Part shown: positions 1 to 41,929 of the stretch, piece by piece
Layout: each line of letters starts with the position of its first letter
Position numbering within the stretch: the first letter of the stretch is position 1
Assembly: GCA_965285935.1 (NCBI GenBank)
Contig: OZ260665.1
Coordinates: forward strand, 31,496,001 to 31,560,000
Length of the DNA stretch: 64,000 nt
Reading direction: 5' to 3'
Source of the DNA: Ophelia neglecta
Taxonomy: Eukaryota
Notes under the pieces: model-generated
What the model saw: only the letters and a program-made list of their open reading frames with translations
Databases searched by the model: none
Told to the model about the DNA's origin: nothing
Translations under genes and position numbers: made by a program

Positions 1-328
1 GTCGCGATATGTTCTGAGACTGGGAGAGTTCTATAGGTTGGATCATTTATTCCTTGACGATGTAGTGTAAGTCTTTTTCTTAGGGAATTTTTTGTTTGTC
101 CTATGTATTGTTTATCACAGCCTTCACATTGCAATACGTACAATAAATTTTCGGTTTTACAAGTCATGGAATGCTTCACCTTAAACGTTGTATTGCTGGG
201 GTTAAATATAAACGAGTTGCCCTCGATTATATGCTTACAGGTACCACATCGGCTTTCATTACATTTTGTCACAATCGGGTTTGTGTCGACATTTCCATGA
301 AATGCAGCCCTAGTGAGTATTTTTTTTA
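1..328 (-). mobile_element. Inverted duplicate of the 3' part of the Penelope-like element (reverse complement of 1475-1802); continues past the left window edge
   Basis: Position x pairs with 1803-x. ORF 103..300(+) translates identically to ORF 1503..1700(-). The junction to the forward copy is at 328/329. Confidence 0.95.
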
Positions 329-1935
329 AGGAACAAAACAGTCAGTATGTGAGTATCAAAAATCCATCCGACTTGAAATTTCGGCCAATTGTAGCAGGAC
401 CAAGTTGTCCCACACATAGAATAAGTGACCTGACTGATAAAATTCTCAAACCTCTCCTCCCTGAAGTAAAAAGCTACGTCAGGGATGATATAGATTTTCT
501 CACCAAATTACCCGACCAGGTAGGCCCCAACGACATTCTAGTATCATTTGATGTAACCAGCCTCTATAGCAATATACCACATGTACTGGGCCTCGAAGCT
601 ATAGAGTACTGGCTTGAAATTCACCACGAAAAAGTATCACGAGGTCGTTTCTCTAAACAATTCATCAAAGAAGCAATAGCACTTATCTTAGAAAATAATT
701 GCTTCCTTTTCGATGAAAAAATGTACCTCCAGACCAAGGGTACCGCAATGGGTACAAAGGTTGCCCCCTGTTATGCAACATTAACCCTAGCATACTTAGA
801 GGAAAAATTACATGGCATCCTTTTAACTCGATACCCCGCGGATTACGCAGAATACATATGGGAAATGTGGAAAAGATATCTTGATGATTGTTTCCTAATA
901 TGGGACAATTCCAAAGGAGATATTGCTGAATTCCACCACATAATCAATGGCCTGCATCCCGATATCAAATTCACCATTGAATCGAGCAAAGACAAATTAC
1001 CCTTTTTAGATATTCTGATCATAATAAAGGACGGAAATTTAACAACAGATATTTACAGCAAAAAAACAGATAGCAAACAATACCTCCACTTTAACAGCTG
1101 CCACCCTAGACACACAAAGTACAACATTCCATACAACCTTGCCCGCAGAATTTGTACCATTGTCAAAGATCGAAGAACAAGAGATTTAAGATTAGAAGAA
1201 TTAAAATTTAATCTCCTGGAAAGAAAGTACCCCATGGACCTGATAGAAAATGGCTGCAATAAAGCTAAAAGGCATAGCATCGAAGAACTGAGAACAACCA
1301 GGGAAAAAGAACCGGACAAAGGAGTAATCACTTTTGTTAGCACGCACAATCCAAACAACCTCAATTTATTTAGCTTCACCAGTTCTACGATAAATGTACT
1401 AGAAAGGGACCCTAGGTGCAAACTGATACTAGAGAAAAACAAAATCATTAGCAGCAAACGCCAAGCACCTAGCCTAAAAAAAATACTCACTAGGGCTGCA
1501 TTTCATGGAAATGTCGACACAAACCCGATTGTGACAAAATGTAATGAAAGCCGATGTGGTACCTGTAAGCATATAATCGAGGGCAACTCGTTTATATTTA
1601 ACCCCAGCAATACAACGTTTAAGGTGAAGCATTCCATGACTTGTAAAACCGAAAATTTATTGTACGTATTGCAATGTGAAGGCTGTGATAAACAATACAT
1701 AGGACAAACAAAAAATTCCCTAAGAAAAAGACTTACACTACATCGTCAAGGAATAAATGATCCAACCTATAGAACTCTCCCAGTCTCAGAACATATCGCG
1801 ACCTGTGCGGCACATTTAGACAAAAAATTTAAAATTTACCCGTTCTATAAAATATGCAATCCCCAGAAAGCCTTCATTGATTCCAAGGAAATGTACTTCA
1901 TTAACATGTTCAAACCCACGCTCAACGCAAAGTAA
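329..1935 (+). CDS. Penelope-like element (Neptune-type) reverse transcriptase + GIY-YIG endonuclease, 5'-truncated
   Basis: RT motifs RPIV, SFDVTSLYSNI, QTKGTAMG, RYLDDCFLIW, LPFLD. Thumb YLHFNSCHP. Cys-rich linker CNESRCGTC. GIY-YIG domain NLLYVLQCEGCDKQYIGQT..RLTLH. The ORF is open to the stop at 1935. The apparent start at 313 comes from the inverted segment. Confidence 0.93.
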
Positions 1936-4091: not shown

Positions 4092-7000
4092 TGTTTTATT
4101 CCTCCTCGTGGGAGAGTACATTATGATGATACAGTTACGATATATTATGTTAAGAAAAATGGAAATTTAAAGTACATCGAATAAATAATAATGATTATTT
4201 CAAAAACACATTAACACGCAAAATGGGCCACACTAGCAATAATGTAGTCCATAGCCAGATCAAAATTTTCACCATAGTTCACAGAGCTTTATGGCAATAA
4301 CAGCTATACACGGCTTAGGGCATCTAGAGTGTTGCGACTTTTACACCCAGAATGCGATATCTCGACATGTACATGGAGTGCACGGCCGCTGCAACCTGGA
4401 CGTTGATGTCAGCGTTGCTCCGGTCAAATTGCTCGCCACACCAAAGGATCCATAGAGACCGGCGCTCATCCCATGTTAGTGAGTCGGTTCGGGGCGGACC
4501 CATCGGGCTGACTAGTTCCTCCATCGACAGGGCATCTTCTAATAGGACTCGCTGTTCGCGGAGGCGGGGGCACCGTAGGAGAAAGTGCATCTCCGACTCC
4601 CTCTCTTCAACACAAAGATGGCATTCTCTCATCTGGTAGAAGCTATGCTCTCGTCTCCCCGAGTGGGTGGCTAGCCCAGCCTCCCCCAGGATTAGCTTAA
4701 CCATCGTTCTGCACGATGGGAGAGACGTCGGAACTTTGACTGCAACCAGCCACCATGTGCACATGGCTATCGGTACAACGGTCCCTTCAGAGAACTTTCT
4801 TAGCGTCTTTAGCCTAGGATACATGAGTGTCGAGGCTGTCCACTCACTGACTCTTTCACTGTCCATCGCTAAACGTATTGTTCGCTTCCACGAGTGCTTG
4901 GAAGGAACGGTGCCACTCAGTAACATATGATCTAAATATGTTTGTAGTCCGTACACAGAGCATGTTTGCAATGCCTGCGCCAGCGGGTTGTCCTTATTGC
5001 TTCGGTTTGAAAGTTCGGCATCAACTAGGGCCTCAATGGCCATCCATTTGAGCCATCCAGGGTCACGATCGAGAAGTCCCCTTAGGGAGCACAGTCGACT
5101 GTGTACCAGCTCGTGCCTGACACTTTTCCACCCCAGCAGGCAGTAGGCCGCAGGTGTCGAGGTGTGGAGTGGAAGTCCTTGAAAGCGCTTCCCCCAACAT
5201 CGATGAAATTTTTCCAATTTCTCCAATTGAGTTTCATTCTTGTAGACGGAACTAGTTCTAGTCCATAGAGCAGAGCCGGGAGGACGACTGATAAGTAGAG
5301 CTTGGATGCGAGGGTTGGCTGTATACCCTGGAAACAAGTTCCTATTCCAATCAATGCACGACACTTAACTCCGGCTTTCACAATCCTCTAGTCAAGGTAT
5401 GAGTCAATAGAAGTGCGCGAGTCTCCCATATGGGTTCCTAGGTGAACGCATCCATCGCTAGCGTTCACAGTAATGCCACACATTGTCACTGAAGGTTTTT
5501 TCATCATTACACCATTCTGTTTCTCCTTGCCGGCGAACCGTAAGAGTTCCGTTTTGGATGGGTTAAAGGAGAATCGCCACTGTCTGCTGTATTCCTCTGC
5601 GGTAGTTAGCAGCCTTTGAATGCTGCTTAGATGAAGAGCAACCAAGGCGACATCGTCCGCAAAGGCTGGTTCCGTACACACATGTCCGTATACAGAGGCT
5701 CCACATCCCACATTCTCGAGGGTCTCAAGAAGCCCCGTCGCAAAAACCTCATACAGTCTCAAGGAGAGGCGTCCACCTTGGAACACACCCTGTCGGACGG
5801 GGAACGACGCCGATGTTTTTCTACCCAGTCTTACGACGCAATGGAAGTCTCGGTACCACCTTCTCAGTAGCGTCCACATCACACCTGTCACCCCGAGATT
5901 ATATAACTTGTAGAAAAGTCCGTTTATCCACACCCGATCAAATGCCTTCTTGGTGTCCAGGAAGGCGACGTAGACGTCACTGCCACGGTTCCGATTGTAC
6001 TCTATGGTTTCTCGTACCACCATTGAGGTTTCCTTGCTCGAGCAGCCTGGAAATGCTGCTCCTTGCATGCGACCTAGCCGATTATTTTCTAGGAGCCAAG
6101 GGTCAATTCTGGACAGAAGGATCCCCTCAAATGCTTTACATGTCATGGTAAGTAGTGTTATTTTCCTGTAATTATCTTTGATCTGTTTTGATTTATTTCC
6201 TCCTTTATGCAGAGGTATGGCAACTCCTTGTTTGAGGTTCTTTGGGATATAACCATAATCAATAATACTATTTAGTATTAATGTCAAGGCAACTACGACT
6301 GCTTCTCCTCCAAAGCGAAAGTGCTCGGGGTCGATGTCGTCCCAGCCTCCAGCCTTACCAAGCTTAAGTCCTCGGACCTCAGTGCTCACCTCCAGGAAAT
6401 ATATGGGTTGTTTGAGGAACATACATGGATTTAATTTTGCTGAGGTCTCCATGTTGCAGACTTCTTCCTCCACCTTCCTTTTGAAGTCTTCGCTGTAAGT
6501 AGGGTCGTTCGAAGGGATTGCCAGCTTTCTGAAGTAATCCCGCCACTCGTCGCACATTGCGTTAATGTCATTAATTAGCTCTCCTGTATCTGACTTAATG
6601 GCGGGGAACCTTTGACCCCTTGGACCATTTCTTCGTTTATTTGCGAGATAGTAGAAATATTTTTGGTCAACTTCTTTCGAGCGTAACAGTTCGGATTCTT
6701 GGGTCAGCTCGTAGTTCCTTTCTTCAAGTCTTCTGCTTTTTCTGTAAAGCCGTTTCTCTTCCTTGTAGGCGCGAAAGAGGGCATTTTCTGGATCCCTTGG
6801 TTCTCCAGCCTCCTTCCACTTCCAGCGCGCTCTAATTAAGGTTTGACCGTTTTTTACTCGAAAGGTCCCGATTCCAGAAAGGCTTGATGTGAGGCGAGTA
6901 CTTTGAACGCGGCACTCCATTGTTGGCCACATTTATCATGTTCGCCAAGACCTCATTAAGAAATGGATCAATCTGGTTCACAACTAGTCTCTCAGTACAG

Positions 7001-10899: not shown

Positions 10900-13800
10900 G
10901 GTGTGGCGGCATTTTCTCCTCCGCAGCAGCCATTACATCAGCAAACAATAGGATTTCCGCAAAATGCCTACAGGCCTGTAAATTATTATGGACCATACGA
11001 CGCATCAATCCAACAAACAAGACCATGCTATGGGACTCAGCGTCCACAACTACCCTCTCAAACCAGTTATAGCAGGGCGGCAACCCCCACAACTGGACCT
11101 GTTATGCCACCTCCGCTGATTGCTCATCGTGCTCCGGGTATGATCCCGGCCGACGGTCCTGTAACTGCGTCAGTCAACCTAGCGGGCAATCAACAGTTTG
11201 CTGCGCCCAGGCCAAATGCCACATCATCATCAGTAATGAGGAGTACTAGTGAAGGACAGACAGTCCCTGTCTCCACTGGCATACGGACACAACAGAATGA
11301 TCTTCTGCATGGAACACAGGAGGCGGGTCCTTCGGCTGATGGTGGTACGGGAACAGTAAACCCGCCAGTGGGAGATCAAGGCCTTCCTGCCGACACCGGA
11401 CAGCCGCGGGCAGTGTAGGTGCCACAATCGGTAACTGATCTGTCCTTCCTGGTCTGGAATATCAGAGGTCTTGCAACGAAAACTTACTCCAAGATTTTAG
11501 ATCCCCAGTTCTTGGAGATTGTGGATCAATCTGACATCTTGTTGTTCACCGAAACATGGGGCAATGATTTGCAAAACCTGGATATTCCCGGATATGACGC
11601 AGTTTATGCGCATAGAGAAGAACTTAACCCTAGAGCAAAAAGGTTTTCAGGTGGTATCGCCGTTTATTTTCGGTCGCATCTGGCGAAGGGAATAACAATT
11701 CTAAAAAAAGTAAAAGATTGTATATTATGGTTAAAACTGTCTAAAGCAATTTTTTGGTGATAAAGACATTTTGATTGCTCTGGTTTATAATGTCCCTCAG
11801 GACTCGACTAGAGCTCCAGACTCACCAAATGTTTTTGCTTTGTTGGAGTCCCATATTGCAGAGTTCGAAAGTGTACAACCAGATAGATATGTATATATTG
11901 TGACTGGGGACTTTAACGCCAGAACTTAGGTATTGAATGATTTTATTCGATTCGATAATAATTCTTCTGATCATATATTGCTGCCTGAAGAGTATGCTGA
12001 TGATTCTACCTTACCAAGAACTTCAATGGATGTTACTGTTAATAATTATGGGCACAGGTTACTAGATCTGTGTTGTGCTACCGGCCTCCGTATTGCAAAC
12101 GGTCGGCTTGGGAATGATAAAGATTGTGGTAAATATACATATATAGGTGGAGTCGGAGCAAGTGTTATAGATTATGTACTGTGTAAGCAGTCAGTGACCC
12201 AAATGTAATGACCCAAATGTAATGAGAGACCATAGCCCTCTTAAATTTGAATTTAAAAATTTGGGTAATAAGCCGGAGAGCAAACCTGCAGTGATGAGTA
12301 CTAAATTAGTTTGGAATTCAGAATGTGCATGTAGGTCAATTTAGAGCCTCATTAAATAGTGCTCTCGGTAGTTTAAATCTAAATTTAACTCCAATGATAT
12401 ATAGCATTGACATCCAGGTTACTAAATATACAGATAAATTACTTGATGTCGCGCTGCCTCTTCTCGGCAAACAAATCCGGCCACATGTTGTACGAACTAC
12501 ACCAGTTATTGATACTCCTGCGTGGATGTGCAATAAATGCAAGACCTTGCGAGATGAATTTCATGAAAAGCTTGATTTATATAGACAGAATAGTATCGAA
12601 GATATTCGGGCGAATTTGAGATTGGCCAGATCTAAATACTCTAAGCACGCTGATATTTGTAAAAAGAAACATAGCGTAGGTCAAACAAAATCATTGCTAG
12701 ATGCCCGTAAGAATAATGCCAGATTATACTGGAAAATGTTGAAAGGTTCAGCTAGTCGTATTTACCCAAACATTGAAATGGCTGAATTCTATAATTTCTT
12801 CAAAACTATTTCTAACCCCCCAAATATTGAAGACTTTGAGATTGCTAATGAATATAAATCATTTGTGCAAAACTATGTAAGAGATAAGTCTATGTTTAGT
12901 GAATTGGATACGGAGATATCTGTAAATGAGATTCTTTCAGCGATTCGGCAGCTTAAGGCTGGTAAGGCGGCAGGGCCCGACTTACTGATTAATGAAGTAT
13001 TCATTTATTCAGATGATTTGGTGCCGTCGTTGCAGGGGCTCTTTAACAATATCTTGAGTGCAGGTGACTTTCCGTCCTCTTGGACAGATGGTATCATTTT
13101 ACCCATCCATAAGAAGGGCTCTTTACACCAAGCTGAAAACTATCGTGGGATAACGTTACTTAGCGTACTGGCAAAGCTGTTCACTCGCATTCTTAACAAT
13201 CGTCTGATTTCTTGGGCAGAGGAGTATGGGGTGTATATCGAAGGTCAGGCAGGGTTCCGTGCTGGCTATGGTACAATAGACAATTTATTTGTTCTGCATG
13301 GGCTTATATCAAATTATTTGAATTCTAAAAAACAATTATACTGCTGCTTTATTGACTTCCGTAAAGCCTTTGATTATGTCAATAGAAATGGTCTCTGGTA
13401 TAAACTTATAAAGTTAGGAATTTCTGGCAAGCTTTTTAATGTTATAAAAAGCATGTATTCTTGTGTTAAATAAGCTGTTCGGTCCTTGACTGGGAAAATT
13501 AGTGAGTCGTTCGAATGTTTATTAGGCGTCCGTCAAGGCGAAAACCTCTCTCCATTTTTATTTTCCATTTACTTTAATGATCTTGATCATGAATTGTCTA
13601 ATAGCCAACAACCCACAGGAATTAGCATTGATTATATTAAGCTCTATATACTTTTGTATGCTGACGATGCCGTCATATTGGCAGATACGTCGGAGGGTCT
13701 GCAATCAGGACTGAATACACTAGGAACATATTGTGAAACATGGATATTGAGGTTAAGCACAGAAAAAACTAAAGTGGTAGTTTTTAGAAAAGGGGGCAGG

Positions 13801-14970
13801 TTACCGGGGAATCTGGGGTTCAAGTATAAAACAGCAAAATTAGAAGTAGTCTCGAACTTTTCTTATTTGGGTTTAGTCTTATCAGTGGGCGGCTCTTGGA
13901 CGGCAGCCCAGGAGACCCTGGCGAAGCAGGCCACGAAAGCAGTTTTTTGTTTGAAAAAATATACATATAGATATAACATGAGCCCCACAGACATGTGCTC
14001 TTTATTTGATAAATTAGTTCTTCCCGTTTTAAACTATTCCTCTGAGCTATGGGGCTTTCATCGGGGGGTGAATGTAGAGAGGGTTCATCTCAAATTTTGT
14101 AAAAGTATTTTAAACTTAAAAGACAGTACAAAGAATGAAATGGTTTATGGGGAGCTTAATCGGTTTCCTTTACAAATTAATAGGTACCTAAATATAATTA
14201 AATTGTGGCTTAAACTGATTCAAGTAGGTGGTAATAAGCTAATGCGGAAAGTCTATTTAATGTTATACAGCAGAATACAGCAGGATAATTGGGCCAGTAA
14301 AGTAAAATCTCTTCTGTTCAAATACGTTTTTATGAGAAGCTTGGCTGAATTAAGGTGTTGCCGATGTAAAACAATTTATAGTATTATTTAAACAGAGACT
14401 CTTTGATTGCTATAAGCAAGATTGGCATGGGAATATAAACGATTCCCCAAAGTGTATATTTTATCGGTTTGTTCATCCAGACTTTGGCGTTCTGCCTTCT
14501 TATATGGACTGTGATGTGAGCATCATGAATAAAAAAAACCTGTGCAGATTTAGGTGTCGCAATCATTTTTTGTATGTGGAGAGGGGCAGCTGGCAAAGGC
14601 CACCTGTAGAGTTTTCAGAGCGCAAATGTAGTGTATGTGATAAGTTGGACGATGAATACCATTTTGTACTGGAATGTTGTTTATTTTTCGAACTACGTGC
14701 CAGATATATTCCAAGATACTATGTAGTAAGGCCTAATGTATACACATTTTTGGAACTGCTTAGATCTGCCAATAGTAAAACTCTAAATAACTTAGCAATT
14801 TACATCAGAAAAGCATCTGATATACATAAATCTTATAATTACTGATACCATATTATTCATTGAATTTGTAAGCATTTAATGGTCTCTCTGACGCCATGTA
14901 TGTTCATTATATGTATTGACTGTACAACACGTAGGGTGTATTCCCTTTTGTTGAATAAAACACACTATCA
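10900..14970 (+). mobile_element. RTE-X-like LINE, 5'-truncated in ORF1, with a disrupted APE-RT-CCHC ORF2
   Basis: P/Q/T-rich ORF1 tail at 10903-11418. APE motifs VWNIRGL, LFTETW, SGGIAVY, GDFNAR, SVIDY. RT motifs NYRGITLLS, FIDFRKAFD, GVRQGENLSP, LYADD. C-terminal RFRCRNHFLYVERG..CSVC..DDEYHFVLEC. AATAAA at 14954-14959. Several stops and frameshifts. Confidence 0.9.
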
Positions 14971-20368: not shown

Positions 20369-23300
20369 CTAACAGTTGACTATATCGTCAGGTAGCCTGA
20401 GGCCGTGGATAATGTCTTTGACTTGACCCCCCTGTAGATAGACTCGCGGGGTGCGGGGAGGAAGTCTGTTACAGATCTCCTGGGGGTTGGTCCCTATTTG
20501 TTTACCCACTCCAGTGACGGAGGTGTCCGGGTCGAAGTCCGGGGTGTACACGGTGAAAACTTCACCTGCGTCTAATTGTTCCGGGACGCGAACTGTTATC
20601 GCGTCCATACTCACTTTACCAACGACGTGACACTTCTCACCTGAAAATTATTATTCTCATTATCATCATTATAATTATCATCAGTCATCTTTAAGCAGGA
20701 ACGCACGGTCAATGACCAGTGATTGTTCTCCCCGAGGCTGCTGCCCGGCTCACAAACGAGCACAATAAGGAATATGATTTAGGAAAAACAAATGAAAAAT
20801 GTTAAATCTGGGACTAAGATGGATCCATATTAGTCCCAGGTTAAATACACTTGAATTTTGACTAGGACATAAAACCCACGACCAACCATCAATTTAGGTA
20901 TAGCACAGCCTAAATAATAAAATGGCACTACAATAAAATATATATTCAAAACAATTATATAATTTCCTGTATCTTCAGGTACATTGTAAATTCAAATTCT
21001 TAGATGAAACTTTACACCCGTTTTCTGCTTTCCCGATCAAATAGGGGTGGCAATTTATTTTGATATCTTTAGATAGAGAAAGATAATAAACAGGCAGCCC
21101 TACTTAAATCTTTATTTTTGCTCAACCACATGTTCACTGGTGTCCTTCTCTAAACGGATATAAATGTCCCCAGCATTAATGACCGATGCAATACTACCAG
21201 ACAGTATATTCTGAATTGTCTTCTTGGCATTAATTGTTAAGTTTACGGGTTGATATTTAGCCATTTCTTAAAATTTAACAATTCTTCAGAGAGAGTCTGC
21301 TGAATCATCAGTTTGTCCTTATGATTTAAAATCGAAGCAGTTCCATCGTCATTTCACAGCTGCTACTGCTTAGTCATTTAAAACACAGTAACCAAAGAGG
21401 TTGAACACTAAGGCACCCCATGCATTGTTTCAAAATACAATTCAAACCAGAGTAATGCCCTGCCCCCATCCCACGGTGCCGAAGTTTATTCAAGAAAACC
21501 GGTCAGGATCAATTCCTACCCCTCCTCAGGGGGGGGGGGGGGGTATGATGCCATTGAGACAGTTTTGTCCTGGCCCATGTTAACTGTGAGTTGGTTTGTT
21601 CAAAACGAACAATGAATTTTTGGATTGTGTAAATGAACCGCGCGGCACAATTTCTTTTCATATCAATTCATTCATCTCCTGCATTCTGTTTTAAAAATCC
21701 TCTTGTTCAGTCCAGGTTGCGGCATTACAAGCCTGAATATTTACTTTCATTTGAAACAAGGGGGCCACCTTAAACCGCCATAATAATATAACTTGGCTGA
21801 GGAAATATCAATCATTGGCGATATCTAAATTAACTGATTTGAGAAGGACATGACTGCTCCAACCTGTTTTATCTCGGATTACGATTCCTTTGTTCGCCAG
21901 GTGGCGCCAGTAGCCATCCGCGAAGCCTATAGGTAGGGTGGCTATCCACTCATTGTCCTCACAGGTGTACGTACAGCCGTAACCTACCTGTGAAAATATA
22001 CTCTATGAAATCAATAAAAGTGATTAATTGAACTTTAACTGAATTAAATTAGGATAACGTTAATATAGTATAAAAGGCGGGGTCTCAACTTCATATACCC
22101 CGTTCAAAAACTGCTGCTTATGGCAAGTCTATAAAAATAAGGGGTGTATATTATGGGATAATGTTTCTGAAATAATTGACTGTAAGTGTAATTTTTTCTC
22201 ATTTAAAAAACGTTTAAAGCTTTTCTTGTTGAAAAACGAGGTTCCTGTGAATCCTCCGACATGATCTGTTTGTCAATTGCTCGTAGCATGTGGTTCCCAT
22301 ATTAATTATCTGTTTTTGTTGATGTTTATACATGACTTCCACCTTCGATTTTTTTTCTCTTTTAGCGCACTCACTGTTAATTTGAACTTATTTTTATGTA
22401 CCTAAGTTGAGGGCTCATACTCCAATCTGGAGTCCTGCCCCCTTTGTTCCTTAATATTATTTATCTGGAACAGTTGGATTTTCTCATTAGTGCTTTAGTG
22501 CTTAGTTGCAATTGGGTTATTGTTCATGTTATTTTTGTGTATTTGATATATATAGGAACAATAAACAGATTTTGAATTGAATTGAATATAAGTTATTATA
22601 CAGAGATGTAAGAGCTCGGAGAAGTCCGAAACATTTCTATTAAAGTTTGACGCACATTTACAGCAAGTAGTGTCGTATTTTTTTCTTCATCCTGCACACT
22701 ATACTTGATTGTGTAATGTCTCGTTTTCAAGTCTCAATTATATAAACATAGTTTAAAAGAGTCACTGTATTTATCGTTATCCAAAATTATCATGCATATT
22801 TTCGTTAGGCTTCTGTTGTACATATGTTTTAATACTACATGATGTACTCTCTCCCACGAGGAGGCGAAATAAAAAAATAAATAAAAGCAAGGTCTGCTTC
22901 AACAATTCTGGACACTTTTTTCCCTGGAAGTGACCCATATTTCCCCTATAGGGTGGTAAGTTGGCGCCCGATTGCACATAGGTGTTTTCAACTGATTGCC
23001 ACAAGGCAAATTACTTTTGAACGAAATTCAAATTCTAGAATTAAAAAGGAGTCAAATGGATATACCTAGCAGAAATTGCGTAGCTATTAGACAAAGACAT
23101 ATATCATTTAGGAGCTGAAGTGCGAATTTATATTTCTTCATAGGCGGCGCCAAATTACAGATACTCCCTTATAAATCGAAGCAAACTCGTTCTCGTTGTA
23201 CTTTGATACCTGGACATTGAAATTAGCCATTTACCAAATATGCATAAATAACAAAATTAGGTTTTTAAGAAATAAATGTTGGCTAAGTTGAACAAATCTC

Positions 23301-26300
23301 AGATAACTGTTTGCTAGCTAGTAGGAAGAAGTCCTATCATTTCATCCCCACAAGTATATACCAGGACCTTTTCCTAAAATACCCTAACCTCCATGTAAAT
23401 ATAATAACTTAACCTTGTGTACCCCTCCCCCCTTCCTCCCCCGCCCCTTAATTATGCAACGTCCCTAATAAGATATCGCTGGCATACAGAAGGATACATA
23501 TTTACCTTAGCTCCTTTTGTCAGTTGTTTCGACAAGGTAGCATAGCACTTTATTGACATAATCGGTTTAAATCCCATGCGTACAAAGCCTTCCACATCAT
23601 CTCCTTTGAATCAACGAATTCACAAAAACAGCCATGGTTAGCAAATGGCAAACATAAGAATCAAGTATTCAAATCATTAATTATCCTGTGCACCGTACTT
23701 ATCTGTATTCAAGCGTAAAAGGAAGATTTTCAATGTAATTAATAAGATGATTTTAGGGAACTACTGATATGATATTTCTTGATTTGCTGTCACCAAATGT
23801 GCTCACCAGGGGGCAGGCCATATAAAGTAATCCCAGGTCTGACATAGTCATATTCAGTGCCGTAGTTGTTGAGAATGCCACCCGCGTGGGCTAAGTGAAA
23901 CACCAAGCCACGTTCTCTGGAAAAAAAATCCAAAGAAAATATACAGATGAGAATAAAAACCACATTAGTTTATAGCCATACTGACGTATAGCTTTAATAA
24001 TGTGTATTTTTGTATTTCTGAAGTCAATTTTAATCTAATCACCAGTGTAAAGTGTTTACGCTTGAACAATTTGCACCTTCAACAGATAAAAACTATTTAT
24101 AAACACATATACTGAAGATACATTTACCACAAAAGACTGTGGGGTGAAAGCAACATTTTTAGCTCGGTACCTTGGACTTCACGTAGTAGATAAAATATGA
24201 GGCTGCGTGCCTTCGTTGGTATACGAAGGGCGAGTGGGTTTTAACAACGAAATCACAGAACCGAATACTTTAACTGACTAAAAATAAACCTGCAATTTAT
24301 TGATCATGGTTATTATTGTACTATTTGAACTAGTAGGACTTGGAATGGTAATTCACAAATACACAAACTTCAATTCAATCAATAATATTTGTAAATTCCC
24401 GAATCCTTTCAAGCGCTGCATTCTGTTTGTCACTCAAGCCATACAGAGGACGCGCATTCGTAGAAAAAAATGCACGGCCACTACAACTGAGTTGTGCAAG
24501 CAAGTTCTGTTTAACAAGCCCCGATTTATATGTATCAACACTTTATTCAAGTTTTTTAATACCTAGTACGTGTACCGTGGCATGTTCCTCTATACATAGC
24601 CTCCGTTATCATGTACAATAGTGCCTCTAAGGCATGCTAATAGCTTACATGCTTGCGCCGCTAGTTCCCAAATATTTATTCATAATTTTACTGTTTGATC
24701 CTTGAATCATAGTGTTGACTGCTTTCCCCCCGTTTAAGGTTCTTTAAAGCGACCACTAAACACTCAGATCGTACCTGTACGGAGCAATGCAGTCCGCAAA
24801 GCCTACCATTTGCTGTTTTGTGAACTCGGGGTCTTCATAATCGGCAAAATGAGAATATATACCGTCTAAGTGAACGCCATATTTATCACATGCCTATATA
24901 AAAAAATGAAATTTGCAATTCAAACAAAATGTGGGCCCTATTGAACCAGGTTTCACTAAGCTAAATGTGAGTATATCTATGTTTTGATATTTGATACTGT
25001 AATTAAAATGATCACGAGTAGAACTCCAATGATAAGTAAGTAAGCATGACAGGCTTAGTGAACAATATCTGGTAATGGAATAAATTATGACCAGTTGTAT
25101 ATCGTGTTTCTTCAACACGAGGAAGAAAGATGCCAACCTCGACAAGACGAGCCAGTTCTCCAGGCTGACAACCATTTCTGTTCATTCCTGTATCCACCTT
25201 TATGTTGACAGCCCCTCGTGGAAGGTATCTATTACTGTTAATATAAATAAATACATATTTTATTGCCGATGTTACTTATTGTGGATTTGAAAACTAACAG
25301 CTTCTATGTCTAGATAACAGTGTTACCCCTCAGGGATCTCTTCGATCACTCCGTTAATGTCGCCGTAATCCGGGTAGGTCTTCATGGCCTCGGCCATCCC
25401 CTTGATGGCGTCTTCGTCCGCCACAGTCGGCGTCAGGTTGTACCGGAGACAGCGGTGCATCTCCCAAGATTTCACGTTACCTGCCAGCAAAACTTTGACT
25501 TAAACACTAAAATCAAAGTATTACAGTAAAAATGAGCAAATAATGTTGCTCAATATTTCTATCCAATTATCGGCGTTTACTTGCACAGTTTCAGTCCATA
25601 AATATAAGTTATAGGGTCCTATTATATAATAGGTTAAAGTCTTAACTTACGCTAGTACACAGGCCTTTGAAGTAAGACATTACGGTAGAGTTCTATATCT
25701 TACCAAATACGTGAATGGGTCCTTTGATTCCTGCCAGCCTCAGTTGTATTCCCTCCAAGATGGTAGCCAGCGCGAGCCGTTTGATGCCAAGGGTCTTTAG
25801 ATGTTTGCCGATGGCAGTGGCACCATGACCGGTCGCATCGGCTTTCACCACACCCATTATTTCTAACAGCATAAAAATAATAATATTTTATAGAACAATA
25901 ATAGAAATTGTGATATGCGTCAGCGTCAGTATTAAAGAGAATGCTCGGGTTTTATGTCAGTTTATGACAAACTTAATATTGCAGGTAAGCCCTGCGGTTT
26001 AGCGTATATTTCACATTATTTCTCTCCCTATCAGTGGGGTATCTTTAATGAAAATGGGGCTTTCGCAAGGTATGCTATCAATGGGGTCATCACGTTTATA
26101 TGCGTAACAAAAGAATCTAATTTTCTTTAGATCGAAGGAAACTGACCATACTGTGAGATCGTAAAAATAGTAGCTGAAGAAGTTTTATGAGGACTTTTGA
26201 TCAAATCCTAAGACTATAAGACCCCCGGTTTCAAGCCTGCTTGGAGAACCATCCCCTTCCCCGAAAATAAAAGGAAGTACCATCCCGGCTATCGCCCAAT

Positions 26301-27100
26301 TCTGGGAATCTTTCGACCAAAGAATTAATCAATAAATTGTTCAAGGGATGGGCTCTATAGGACGGCATCAAGAGCTTAGTGAGATTCGATTCAAAACCCT
26401 TATGATTGTGTCGATCGTGTCGATTTTTAAATGTGTCGTGTCCACCTGTCTATAGTGTCGGTTAAAACCCATGACTTCCAACCTATAAATTTAATAAACA
26501 ATAAATGAAAAATATACAACCGAAGGAATGTCGCGGTACAATATTTCGTGAATGCATAGAGCTCTAGCATAACTTTATTAGTGACGGTGATTTATTTTAG
26601 AAGAATCATTTCTGACTCAGGACTTGATACCTATTTGTACACAGATTAAAATATGGTGAAAATCATAAAAATAATATATAATATCTGTTAAATAATTATA
26701 TTAATCTGAAATTCCAGACGGAGTATGAAAGCTCCATATCTCCTAAAGGTAAACCGCTCTGTTATATTATCTTGAATAGTATTTTACTTGCAGATCCTGC
26801 TATAACAGCGCCATATTCGATATTTATTAAAACTATTCCATGCCAACTCATGCAGGTTAACATGGGAAAGTGGACTTAATCTATAACAGTTACTGGTTGG
26901 TAAGTATAGGCATATATCACGTGTTATTGTCTGTTGTCACCTGTTTTCGGGTGGTCCTTCATACATTCGTAGTGGAGCTTGACATTGTTGGTCAGGGCAT
27001 CTAGATCCACCTGGATGTAAACAGGTCGCCCCACTCTGTCAAATAAACCTCCGCCATGTTTCGTCTCAGAGTGAGAATTACTGTCACAGTTCGTGGTCAT
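20369..27100 (-). CDS. alr: Alanine racemase-family enzyme (PLP fold-type III, bacterial-type), 9 coding exons, ~430 aa, divergent active site
   Basis: Exons: 27100-26941, 25862-25704, 25480-25327, 25234(or 25228)-25138, 24893-24775, 23916-23807, 23603-23506, 21987-21864, 20640-20369. All introns are GT-AG and phase-consistent, giving 1293 nt with no internal stop. Motifs in order: [19 protein letters not shown] (PLP Lys), [30 protein letters not shown] (catalytic Tyr), [28 protein letters not shown]. Confidence 0.92.
22075..22586 (+). mobile_element. 3' end of an L2/Crack-type LINE inside a racemase intron
   Basis: Broken translation [28 protein letters not shown], followed by a 3' UTR ending in AATAAA and a (TTGAA)3 tail. 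Confidence 0.65.
22838..22886 (+). mobile_element. Isolated LINE 3' tail matching the end of the 4092-9790 element
   Basis: TGTACTCTCTCCCACGAGGAGGCGAAATAAA, versus TGTACTCTCCCACGAGGAGGAATAAA on the minus strand at 4095-4120. Confidence 0.6.
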
Positions 27101-41078: not shown

Positions 41079-41663
41079 TCATTCCTTTTCACAGACGGGA
41101 TCTCGGTCGAGTAGTTCCTGCAGAGCGTTTATGTAAGTCTGAGCCATTTGCAGCGTCTCGTATTTGGAGAGTTTCCGGTCGCTGCTCATTTCCGGAACTA
41201 CTTCTCGGAGTCGATCGAAGGCGACATTCAAACTGTTCATACGGCGTCTCTCTCTGGCATTGGCTGCTAATCTCCTTTGGCGGAGAGTTTCTTTTGTCAC
41301 GGGCAGTTTACTTTCTAAATCACTATCTGTATCCTTTTCCGCGTCGGGCCTAATTCTGCAACACAAAGAGTCAATTTTGGTTTTTCTTTTTCTTCTGAGA
41401 GGCTTATTTAATTTGTTGGAGGTAGAGTTCGTCATAGGCTTTCGACTTCTATCCATCTTCAGATGTTGGTTCTCTAAAGCAGTTTTTGAATGATTGAAAC
41501 ACAAGTTGACACTGTCCAATTCCATTTGATTCATGTTATCACTTTCTTGGAAGTTATTGTAAGAAAAGTCTTGCTGTGTGTGATATAGGCTGGCTCTCGT
41601 CGGAGGCATCTCTCGTGAAACACATCCTTGCCACAGATAGCTTCCTCTCTCGGAACATTGCAT
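41079..41663 (-). CDS. ato: Atonal-family proneural bHLH transcription factor (ato/amos/ATOH1/7-like), single exon, 194 aa
   Basis: b[59 protein letters not shown] has the atonal signatures [10 protein letters not shown] and [11 protein letters not shown]. First ATG at 41663. AATAAA downstream at 40768-40763. Confidence 0.95.
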
Positions 41664-41929
41664 CGTTCCTGGACTCACGATGGAAATCCTCAACAATGGA
41701 CTAAAAGGCTTGCCCTCTCTGGACTTCTTGGAATCCTAAAAATGGAGGACGACAAATGTCCCCTCAAACAGCTCCACCGTGAAAGTATGAAAAAAAAACC
41801 TTTTATGTTCTCAAATTGAAAATATTATATTAACTTAAAAGTGTTCAAATCGTACCCAGACACGTGGTCAAAACTAAGAATAATGGGTAATTCAGCTCTG
41901 GAAAGCCAACTCCTTGCGTCTCTTGATAC

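What the first reader, a model, noticed from the sequence alone, without database searches (positions are those of the whole stretch)
20369..27100. Intron-containing animal alanine-racemase homolog with a remodelled active site: a candidate D-amino-acid racemase of altered specificity
Seen in sequence: a complete, correctly spliced fold-III racemase ORF that the ORF track misses because it is split into 9 small exons. Compared by eye with G. stearothermophilus Alr (recalled sequence), it retains K39, K129, R136, H166, H200, R219, Y265', M312 and D313. It has KADATGHG instead of KA(N/D)AYGHG (Y43T), HLAHAGG instead of HxANSAA (N203H/S204A), IGFADG (Y284F), and GTNPQEI instead of TINYE (Y354Q). 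Established: Y43, S204 and Y354 contact the PLP phosphate. Y354 gates substrate size; replacing it raises serine racemase activity, and the VanT serine racemase has Asn there. Inference: this copy may make D-Ser or another D-amino acid rather than only D-Ala, which would be a fold-III route to such D-amino acids in an animal, whose known serine/aspartate racemases are fold II.
Basis: partly seen in the sequence, partly recalled or inferred. Interest (0 to 1): 0.85.

Follow-up and report, generated by a model that had tools for sequence, protein, structure and literature searches.

The report
Worm alanine-racemase paralogue with remodelled pocket
This is a real, nine-exon animal (probably annelid worm) gene for a bacterial-type alanine racemase whose cofactor pocket and substrate gate have been rebuilt; it is kept under strong selection beside a normal copy in the same genome, so it may make D-serine or another D-amino acid as well as D-alanine, though no activity has been measured.

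Summary
A minus-strand gene (27100..20369) has nine GT-AG exons and encodes 428 aa with both alanine-racemase Pfam domains. K39, K129, R136, H166, H200, R219, Y265', M312 and D313 are kept. Y43T, N203H, S204A, Y284F and Y354Q are present, and I add R309K, I352N and N353P.

The genome holds four paralogues:
- A is this gene.
- B carries the same derived residues (dN/dS to A = 0.04).
- C has the canonical residues.
- D has Y354N, as VanT does.

Two further lineages in environmental contigs keep the HA/F/Q residues, so this is a conserved subfamily. It lies on a long stem inside a clade whose only named member is an annelid. That clade sits within a choanoflagellate-plus-animal alanine racemase clade.

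A natural bacterial alanine racemase (AlrTt) already combines Gln and Ala at positions 354 and 204. It is still an alanine racemase, with 28% relative L-Ser activity. Relaxed Ala/Ser specificity is therefore likelier than a clean switch of substrate.

No RNA data exist for this species. The scan noted this same stretch once before (s1-748451). Verdict: new variant of a known kind, interest about 0.6.

The parts
26941..27100 (-). Exon 1, with ATG at 27100. N-terminal stretch and first barrel strand. No signal-peptide-like start by eye (no predictor was run).
   Evidence: The start codon and sequence are conserved in paralogue B (75% aa).
25704..25862 (-). Exon 2. PLP-lysine motif KADATGHG: K60 (= K39, codon 25845-25843) and T64 (= Y43, codon 25833-25831).
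   Evidence: Pfam PF01168 at 49.6 bits. PDB alignment to 1bd0 residues 34-84. 96% identical in paralogue B.
25327..25480 (-). Exon 3. Variable barrel segment with an animal-specific insert region.
25138..25228 (-). Exon 4. K168 (= K129) and R175 (= R136) in [11 protein letters not shown].
   Evidence: Pfam hit; residue table; coordinates.
24775..24893 (-). Exon 5. H203 (= H166). It is followed by a loop one residue shorter than in relatives and carrying a Tyr (HFADYE), which is conserved in paralogue B and in L021.
23807..23916 (-). Exon 6. H235 (= H200), H238 (= N203), A239 (= S204) in HLAHAGG, and R254 (= R219) in VRPGI.
   Evidence: HLAHAGG is identical in paralogue B and in environmental contig L021.
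23506..23603 (-). Exon 7. Linker and start of the C-terminal beta domain.
21864..21987 (-). Exon 8. Y300 (= Y265', the second catalytic base), F319 (= Y284') and R325 (= R290').
   Evidence: PF00842 at 42.4 bits. Phe284 is kept in paralogue B, L021 and L022-24.
20369..20640 (-). Exon 9, ending in stop TAG at 20371-20369. K347 (= R309), M350 and D351 (= M312, D313), N390-P391-Q392 (= I352, N353, Y354), plus a conserved C-terminal tail.
   Evidence: PF00842; PDB alignment. 92% identical in paralogue B and 84-87% in environmental contigs, with the NPQE motif (GTNPQE or DTNPQE) kept.

Best explanation
Gene A is one of four paralogues of the animal (holozoan) fold-III, PLP-dependent alanine racemase family in this probably annelid genome. 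It most likely encodes an active head-to-tail homodimeric racemase.

Inferred mechanism, from the family:
- K60 (K39) holds PLP as a Schiff base and acts as one base.
- Y300 (Y265') of the partner subunit is the second base.
- R254 (R219), H203 (H166), R175 (R136) and K168 (K129) tune the cofactor and bind the carboxylate.

What sets it apart is a derived subfamily state that arose on a long stem branch and was then frozen. The three side chains that hydrogen-bond the PLP phosphate are changed (Y43T, S204A, Y354Q). The neighbouring and entryway residues are changed too (N203H, Y284F, R309K, I352N, N353P).

Y354 is the steric gate that excludes side chains larger than methyl. Enzymes with Gln or Asn there accept serine. 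The most likely outcome is therefore a racemase that still turns over alanine, with relaxed specificity towards serine and perhaps other small polar amino acids. PLP binding may be weaker or altered. It would complement the canonical paralogue C, which presumably supplies osmolyte D-alanine.

Shown: the gene structure, the residues, the paralogy, the conservation and the selection. Inferred: activity, dimer formation, substrate range and physiological role.
For: 1. Gene and domains.
2. The catalytic residues are intact and the eight substitutions are mapped.
3. The genome has four loci. B shares all derived residues with A. C is canonical (AYGHG, ANSGA, GYADG, SYE). D has Y354N.
4. Selection. 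A versus B gives dN/dS 0.042 over 420 codons, with pS 0.67. A versus the environmental relatives gives pN 0.10-0.15 at saturated pS. All 7 listed exonic differences among the DNA contig sets are synonymous.
5. Subfamily. A, B, L021 and L022 form a clade with 100% support on a stem of 0.5-0.58 substitutions per site, sister to the Asn354 clade (D, P0088, P0094). Both sit inside a clade with the annelid Paralvinella at its base. HA/F/K/NPQ are kept in L021, and F/K/NPQ in L022-24.
6. Functional analogies from papers. AlrTt (PDB 4Y2W) naturally has Gln360 and Ala209. It is a weaker alanine racemase with 28% relative L-Ser activity, and Q360Y narrows its specificity (PMC4517790). BsAlr Y354N gains 62-fold serine activity, and VanTG N696Y loses 30-fold (PMC4542195).
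7. Polychaetes contain free D-Ala, D-Ser, D-Asn, D-Asp and D-Pro (PMC10918092).
Against: - No transcript, protein or activity data exist for this gene or its subfamily. No RNA run is on record.
- No structural model could be made of the joined protein. Whether Thr64, His238 and Gln392 still hold the phosphate is unknown.
- AlrTt shows that the Gln/Ala pair is compatible with being mainly an alanine racemase, so specificity may be little changed.
- Position 354 and Y284 vary among animal homologues, including Trp284 in the crustacean clade. Some of the 'remodelling' may therefore be tolerated drift.
- Loss of three phosphate ligands at once could mean poor PLP binding.
Confidence: 0.55

Rival explanations
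1. It is an ordinary alanine-specific racemase. The substitutions are compensated or neutral within this lineage, and the paralogues differ only in tissue, timing or kinetics, for example D-alanine osmolyte supply under different salinities.
For: The catalytic core is intact. AlrTt with Gln360 and Ala209 is still chiefly an alanine racemase. Animal alanine racemase is an established osmolyte enzyme. Positions 284 and 354 vary among animal homologues.
Against: Eight pocket and entryway changes arose together on a long stem and were then frozen in four lineages. A canonical copy persists in the same genome. Every tested replacement of Tyr354 by Asn or Gln relaxes specificity.
Confidence: 0.27
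2. It is a PLP enzyme that has left racemisation for another reaction, or a catalytically weak regulatory or binding protein (a pseudoenzyme-like role). On this view the phosphate pocket was rebuilt for a different cofactor mode or ligand.
For: All three hydroxyl ligands of the PLP phosphate are replaced. Thr43, His203 and Ala204 are found in none of the ~45 relatives compared. The loop after H166 is altered and a conserved C-terminal tail has been added.
Against: K39, Y265', R219, H166, R136, K129, M312 and D313 are all kept under dN/dS 0.04. That pattern is hard to explain without two-base racemase chemistry. Thr and Gln can still hydrogen-bond a phosphate, and the backbone amides of 204, 221 and 222 are unaffected.
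Confidence: 0.12
3. It is bacterial contamination or a recent horizontal transfer misread as an animal gene.
For: The family is best known from bacteria, and earlier surveys flagged some eukaryotic racemases as transfers (PMC5169069).
Against: The gene has nine GT-AG exons and four intron-bearing paralogues on 85-149 Mb contigs. It lies between animal retroelements and an atonal-type bHLH gene. Choanoflagellate and animal sequences form one clade, at 99/98 support.
Confidence: 0.01

Closest known systems
Animal alanine racemase (kuruma prawn, black tiger prawn and crayfish enzymes; Corbicula and other molluscan activities)
   Same: Same fold-III family and domain pair, an intron-containing nuclear gene and no signal-peptide-like start. 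It falls in the same choanoflagellate-plus-animal clade as the crab, krill, mollusc and nemertean homologues.
   Different: The crustacean clade keeps Tyr43 and Tyr354 and has Thr204 and Trp284. This gene has Thr43, His203, Ala204, Phe284 and Gln354. I did not have the prawn sequence itself, only crab and krill relatives.
AlrTt, alanine racemase of Thermoanaerobacter (Caldanaerobacter) tengcongensis, PDB 4Y2W
   Same: It naturally has Gln at the Tyr354 position and Ala at the Ser204 position. It is the top PDB hit for exon 2. It shows weak PLP fixation, lower activity and 28% relative L-Ser activity.
   Different: It is bacterial, keeps Tyr at position 43 (Tyr44) and keeps Tyr284 (Tyr287'). 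The resemblance at 204 and 354 is convergent, because the animal clade is ancestrally canonical.
VanT serine racemases (VanTG catalytic domain, PDB 4ECL)
   Same: A fold-III alanine racemase derivative in which replacement of the Tyr354 gate opens the site to serine while alanine activity is kept. 4ecl is among the top PDB hits for exon 2.
   Different: VanT has Asn, not Gln, and is fused to a membrane acyltransferase domain. Paralogue D of this genome, not this gene, carries the VanT-like Asn.
Broad-spectrum racemases (BsrV type) and lysine racemases
   Same: Fold-III enzymes in which a smaller residue at the 354 position widens the substrate range.
   Different: I did not compare their sequences here. 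The paper reports Pro, Ala or Thr at that position, where this gene has Gln. From my own knowledge they are bacterial periplasmic enzymes.

Membership tests
Fold-type III PLP alanine racemase family (Pfam PF01168 + PF00842) | N-terminal barrel domain PF01168 | tested here: met
   Exon 2 alone scores 49.6 bits against a cut-off of 24.1. Exons 4 and 6 also match.
Fold-type III PLP alanine racemase family (Pfam PF01168 + PF00842) | C-terminal beta domain PF00842 | tested here: met
   Exons 8 and 9 score 42.4 and 39.6 bits against a cut-off of 25.
Fold-type III PLP alanine racemase family (Pfam PF01168 + PF00842) | PLP-binding Lys39 and second base Tyr265' | tested here: met
   K60 and Y300 align to K39 and Y265.
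Fold-type III PLP alanine racemase family (Pfam PF01168 + PF00842) | Arg219, His166, Arg136, Lys129, Met312 and Asp313 | tested here: met
   All are present in the alignment.
Strict alanine racemase (canonical bacterial Alr active site) | Phosphate-binding hydroxyls Tyr43, Ser204 and Tyr354, within the KA(N/D)AYGHG motif | tested here: not met
   Thr, Ala and Gln at these positions.
Strict alanine racemase (canonical bacterial Alr active site) | Conserved entryway residues Tyr284', Arg309' and Ile352 | tested here: not met
   Phe, Lys and Asn at these positions.
Strict alanine racemase (canonical bacterial Alr active site) | Alanine racemase activity (EC 5.1.1.1) | not testable with these tools
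   Needs a recombinant enzyme assay.
Holozoan (choanoflagellate plus animal) alanine racemase clade | Groups with the animal homologues in a supported clade | tested here: met
   Support is 99/98 for the holozoan clade and 98/95 for the animal clade. The result is the same with Paralvinella and the environmental contigs added.
VanT-type serine racemase | Asn at the Tyr354 position | tested here: not met
   Gln392 here. Asn is found in paralogue D.
VanT-type serine racemase | N-terminal membrane acyltransferase domain | tested here: not met
   Exon 1 encodes a 53-aa segment that runs straight into the barrel and contains no hydrophobic (membrane-span-like) stretch; the conserved ATG is shared with paralogue B.

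The most novel reading that the evidence does not exclude
Annelids split the animal fold-III racemase into three conserved types at the specificity gate: Tyr (canonical D-Ala maker), Asn (VanT-like) and Gln with a fully rebuilt phosphate pocket (this gene). The Gln type would be a dedicated racemase for a non-alanine substrate such as serine or asparagine. That would give animals a second, fold-III route to signalling or osmolyte D-amino acids, independent of the fold-II serine/aspartate racemases.
Probability: 0.25. Interest if true: 0.8.

Novelty: new variant of a known kind. Interest (0 to 1): 0.6.

Why it matters
Free D-amino acids are abundant in marine invertebrates. Polychaetes hold D-Ala, D-Ser, D-Asn, D-Asp and D-Pro (PMC10918092). 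The only cloned animal sources, however, are one alanine racemase type and the fold-II serine/aspartate racemases.

A conserved, strongly selected subfamily sits beside a canonical copy and an Asn-gate copy in one genome. Its specificity gate and phosphate pocket are rebuilt. This gives a ready natural experiment on how fold-III racemases change substrate, and concrete candidate genes for the unexplained D-amino acids of worms.

It also shows that the Gln354/Ala204 solution, known from one thermophilic bacterium, arose independently in animals.

Tried and rejected
1. RNA evidence. The look-up of sequencing runs found only three DNA-like runs of one sample. Read laying therefore gave DNA contigs and polymorphisms only, with no splice joints.
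2. Joined protein. Under the operators' rule the spliced 428-aa model was not sent to any search, fold or complex tool, so there is no AlphaFold model, fold search or dimer test. All searches were exon by exon, by reference. Inside scripts only, exon rows were merged column-wise into one alignment row for the residue table, the trees and codon numbering.
3. Species identity. A search with the neighbouring atonal-type ORF matched mostly the bHLH domain, across arthropods, molluscs and an annelid. It did not name the taxon. 'Annelid' rests on earlier scan notes plus Paralvinella sitting at the base of the clade that holds all four paralogues.
4. Literature. Five searches found no paper on annelid alanine racemase genes or on gate-residue paralogues in animals. 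The library lacks most subscription papers, including the 2009 prawn cloning paper.
5. Contamination or recent transfer: rejected (see rivals).
6. Pseudogene: rejected by the intact frames in A and B and dN/dS of 0.04.
7. Exact dN/dS against the environmental relatives could not be computed, because synonymous sites are saturated.
Full report
**1. Observation**

The stretch holds a minus-strand gene that the ORF list shows only in pieces. Reading the strand and checking anchors and phases by script gives nine exons:
- 27100-26941
- 25862-25704
- 25480-25327
- 25228-25138
- 24893-24775
- 23916-23807
- 23603-23506
- 21987-21864
- 20640-20369

Every intron begins GT and ends AG, and the phases fit. 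The frame is open for 428 codons to a TAG.

Single exons already match the two alanine racemase Pfam domains. PF01168 scores 49.6 bits for exon 2. PF00842 scores 42.4 and 39.6 bits for exons 8 and 9 in the six-frame genome scan.

I therefore did not send the joined protein to any search, folding or complex tool. Exon rows were merged only inside scripts, for alignment columns, trees and codon numbering.

**2. Residues**

Exon-wise phmmer against solved structures fixes the Geobacillus numbering.
- Exon 2 aligns to residues 34-84 of 1bd0. Its motif reads KADATGHG, so Lys39 is kept and Tyr43 is Thr.
- Exon 9 aligns to residues 303-378. Met312 and Asp313 are kept and Tyr354 is Gln.
- Exon 6 HLAHAGG lies on the HxANSAA segment, giving N203H and S204A.

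An alignment of 44 relatives plus the four copies from this genome confirms K129, R136, H166, H200, R219, Y265 and R290. In this protein the sites are K60, T64, K168, R175, H203, H235, H238, A239, R254, Y300, F319, R325, K347, M350, D351, N390, P391 and Q392.

Thr43, His203 and Ala204 occur in none of the other sequences compared. Position 354 is variable among animal homologues (Y, N, H, S, Q, M, V). Position 284 is Phe or Trp in several of them.

**3. Context in the genome**

The window is C8:31,496,001-31,560,000 of a 762 Mb assembly. The genome holds four loci of this family. I fetched the other three and compared them exon by exon.

| Copy | Location | Residues at the key sites |
|---|---|---|
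| A | this window | [27 protein letters not shown] |
| B | C1, about 72.39-72.41 Mb | the same four motifs; all nine exons intact; same splice phases; 75-96% identical per exon; intron 2 stretched to 14 kb |
| C | C8, about 48.19-48.20 Mb | fully canonical: AYGHG, ANSGA, GYADG, SYE |
| D | C1, about 21.99-22.00 Mb | canonical apart from N203G and Y354N, the residue of VanT serine racemases |

**4. Selection**

Nei-Gojobori counts summed over the nine exons give, for A against B, pN 0.069, pS 0.674 and dN/dS 0.042. The duplication is therefore old and both copies are strongly constrained.

The last search in the 90%-clustered protein collection found two closer relatives of exon 9, at 87% and 83% identity. 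Their contigs are:
- L021, an ENA assembly contig with short introns that carries exons 4-9.
- L022-L024, from three marine metagenomes including a TARA sample, which carry exons 8-9.

L021 keeps HLAHAGG, Phe284, Lys309 and NPQ. L022-24 keep Phe284, Lys309 and NPQ. Against A their synonymous sites are saturated while pN is 0.10-0.15.

Logan contigs of three DNA runs of one sample cover exons 2-9. The seven listed differences that fall in exons are all synonymous. 'Relaxed pseudoenzyme' is therefore not supported.

**5. Phylogeny**

A full-library phmmer with exon 9 and a search with its nearest full-length hit, P0007, gave the relatives. Named ones come from a nemertean, gastropods, a bivalve, a crab, krill, the annelid Paralvinella and two choanoflagellates.

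In a careful IQ-TREE run:
- Choanoflagellates plus animals form one clade (99/98), nested among bacterial alanine racemases of the Oceanithermus type.
- Animals form a clade (98/95).
- All four copies of this genome fall in one clade (100/99) together with unnamed transcripts.

With the partial rows added:
- Paralvinella sits at the base of that clade (95).
- A, B, L021 and L022 form a clade (100) on a stem of about 0.5 substitutions per site.
- That clade is sister to an Asn354 clade (D, P0088, P0094), at 99 for the pair.
- C groups with the canonical-type transcripts.

So there are three conserved types, Tyr, Asn and Gln at the gate, and the Gln type evolved fast once and then froze.

Earlier notes of this scan call the genome an annelid. 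My tree agrees, but I did not identify the species. A search with the neighbouring atonal-type ORF was uninformative.

**6. Mechanism**

- In the Geobacillus enzyme the phosphate oxygens are held by the Tyr43 hydroxyl, the Tyr354 hydroxyl, Ser204 and the Ile222 backbone (PMC4517790).
- Tyr354 faces the substrate side chain.
- Y354N raises serine racemase activity 62-fold with little effect on alanine.
- In VanTG, Asn696Tyr lowers L-Ser conversion 30-fold (PMC4542195).
- AlrTt naturally has Gln360 and Ala209, the same pair as here. It binds PLP poorly, is a weak alanine racemase, has 28% relative activity on L-Ser, and is narrowed by Q360Y.

Inference: this gene keeps the whole two-base machinery, so it should still racemise. 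With Gln at the gate and Phe284 in place of a carboxylate-bonding Tyr, it most likely accepts serine, and perhaps other small polar amino acids, beside alanine. Thr64, Gln392, His238 or the extra Tyr in the HFADYE loop may hold the phosphate in a new way. None of this was modelled or measured.

**7. Comparison with what is known, and novelty**

Fold-III alanine racemase in aquatic invertebrates is known, with enzymes purified from prawns, crayfish and molluscs and a prawn gene cloned (references seen). 'An animal alanine racemase with introns' is therefore not new. The Gln/Ala pair has a bacterial precedent.

I could not find the following described in five literature searches:
- a multi-copy family in one animal with a canonical copy, an Asn-gate copy and two Gln-gate copies;
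- a Gln-gate type with eight pocket and entryway changes conserved across lineages under strong constraint.

Polychaetes contain several free D-amino acids whose sources are unknown. I rate the finding a new variant of a known kind, with interest 0.6.

Noticed in passing
G000:C1:21987684-22001373 (loci L019, L020): Paralogue D keeps the canonical pocket apart from N203G but has Asn at the Tyr354 gate, exactly as VanT serine racemases do. Its nearest relatives P0088 and P0094 also have Asn. On sequence alone it is arguably the cleaner candidate for an animal fold-III serine racemase.
   Followed up: partly
G000:C1:72391542-72412911 (loci L013-L016): Paralogue B has the same nine exons and the same derived residues as the window gene, on another chromosome-scale contig. 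Its intron 2 is expanded to about 14 kb, against about 0.2 kb here.
   Followed up: yes
G000:C8:48200498-48200713 (locus L018): In canonical paralogue C the parts matching exons 7 and 8 lie only 6 bases apart in one frame. The intron between them seems to be absent in that copy.
   Followed up: no
window 20369-20440: The Gln-type copies share a conserved C-terminal tail (..HGLRLPD..VN.) beyond the usual end of the racemase. It is present in A, B, L021 and L022-24 and aligns to nothing in the canonical copies. Its function is unknown.
   Followed up: no
window 22100-22900: Within intron 7 the summed contig depth rises about tenfold (to 200-580 from about 40). Many loose ends and a 128-base skipped form also occur there. 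It is a dispersed repeat and an indel polymorphism, not part of the gene.
   Followed up: no
window 313-1935, 4324-6932, 12325-14391: Long ORFs that look like reverse transcriptases by eye (no domain search was run) lie on both strands upstream of the finding, suggesting retroelement insertions.
   Followed up: no
window 41079-41696 (-): A single-exon atonal/amos-type bHLH ORF of 205 aa. Its bHLH domain is 70-84% identical to arthropod, mollusc and annelid proteins, and the rest is conserved only in unnamed contigs.
   Followed up: partly
L021:2763-5698: In the environmental relative, GMC-oxidoreductase exons lie just downstream on the opposite strand. The window has retroelement-like sequence in the corresponding position, so the neighbourhood is not shared.
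   Followed up: no
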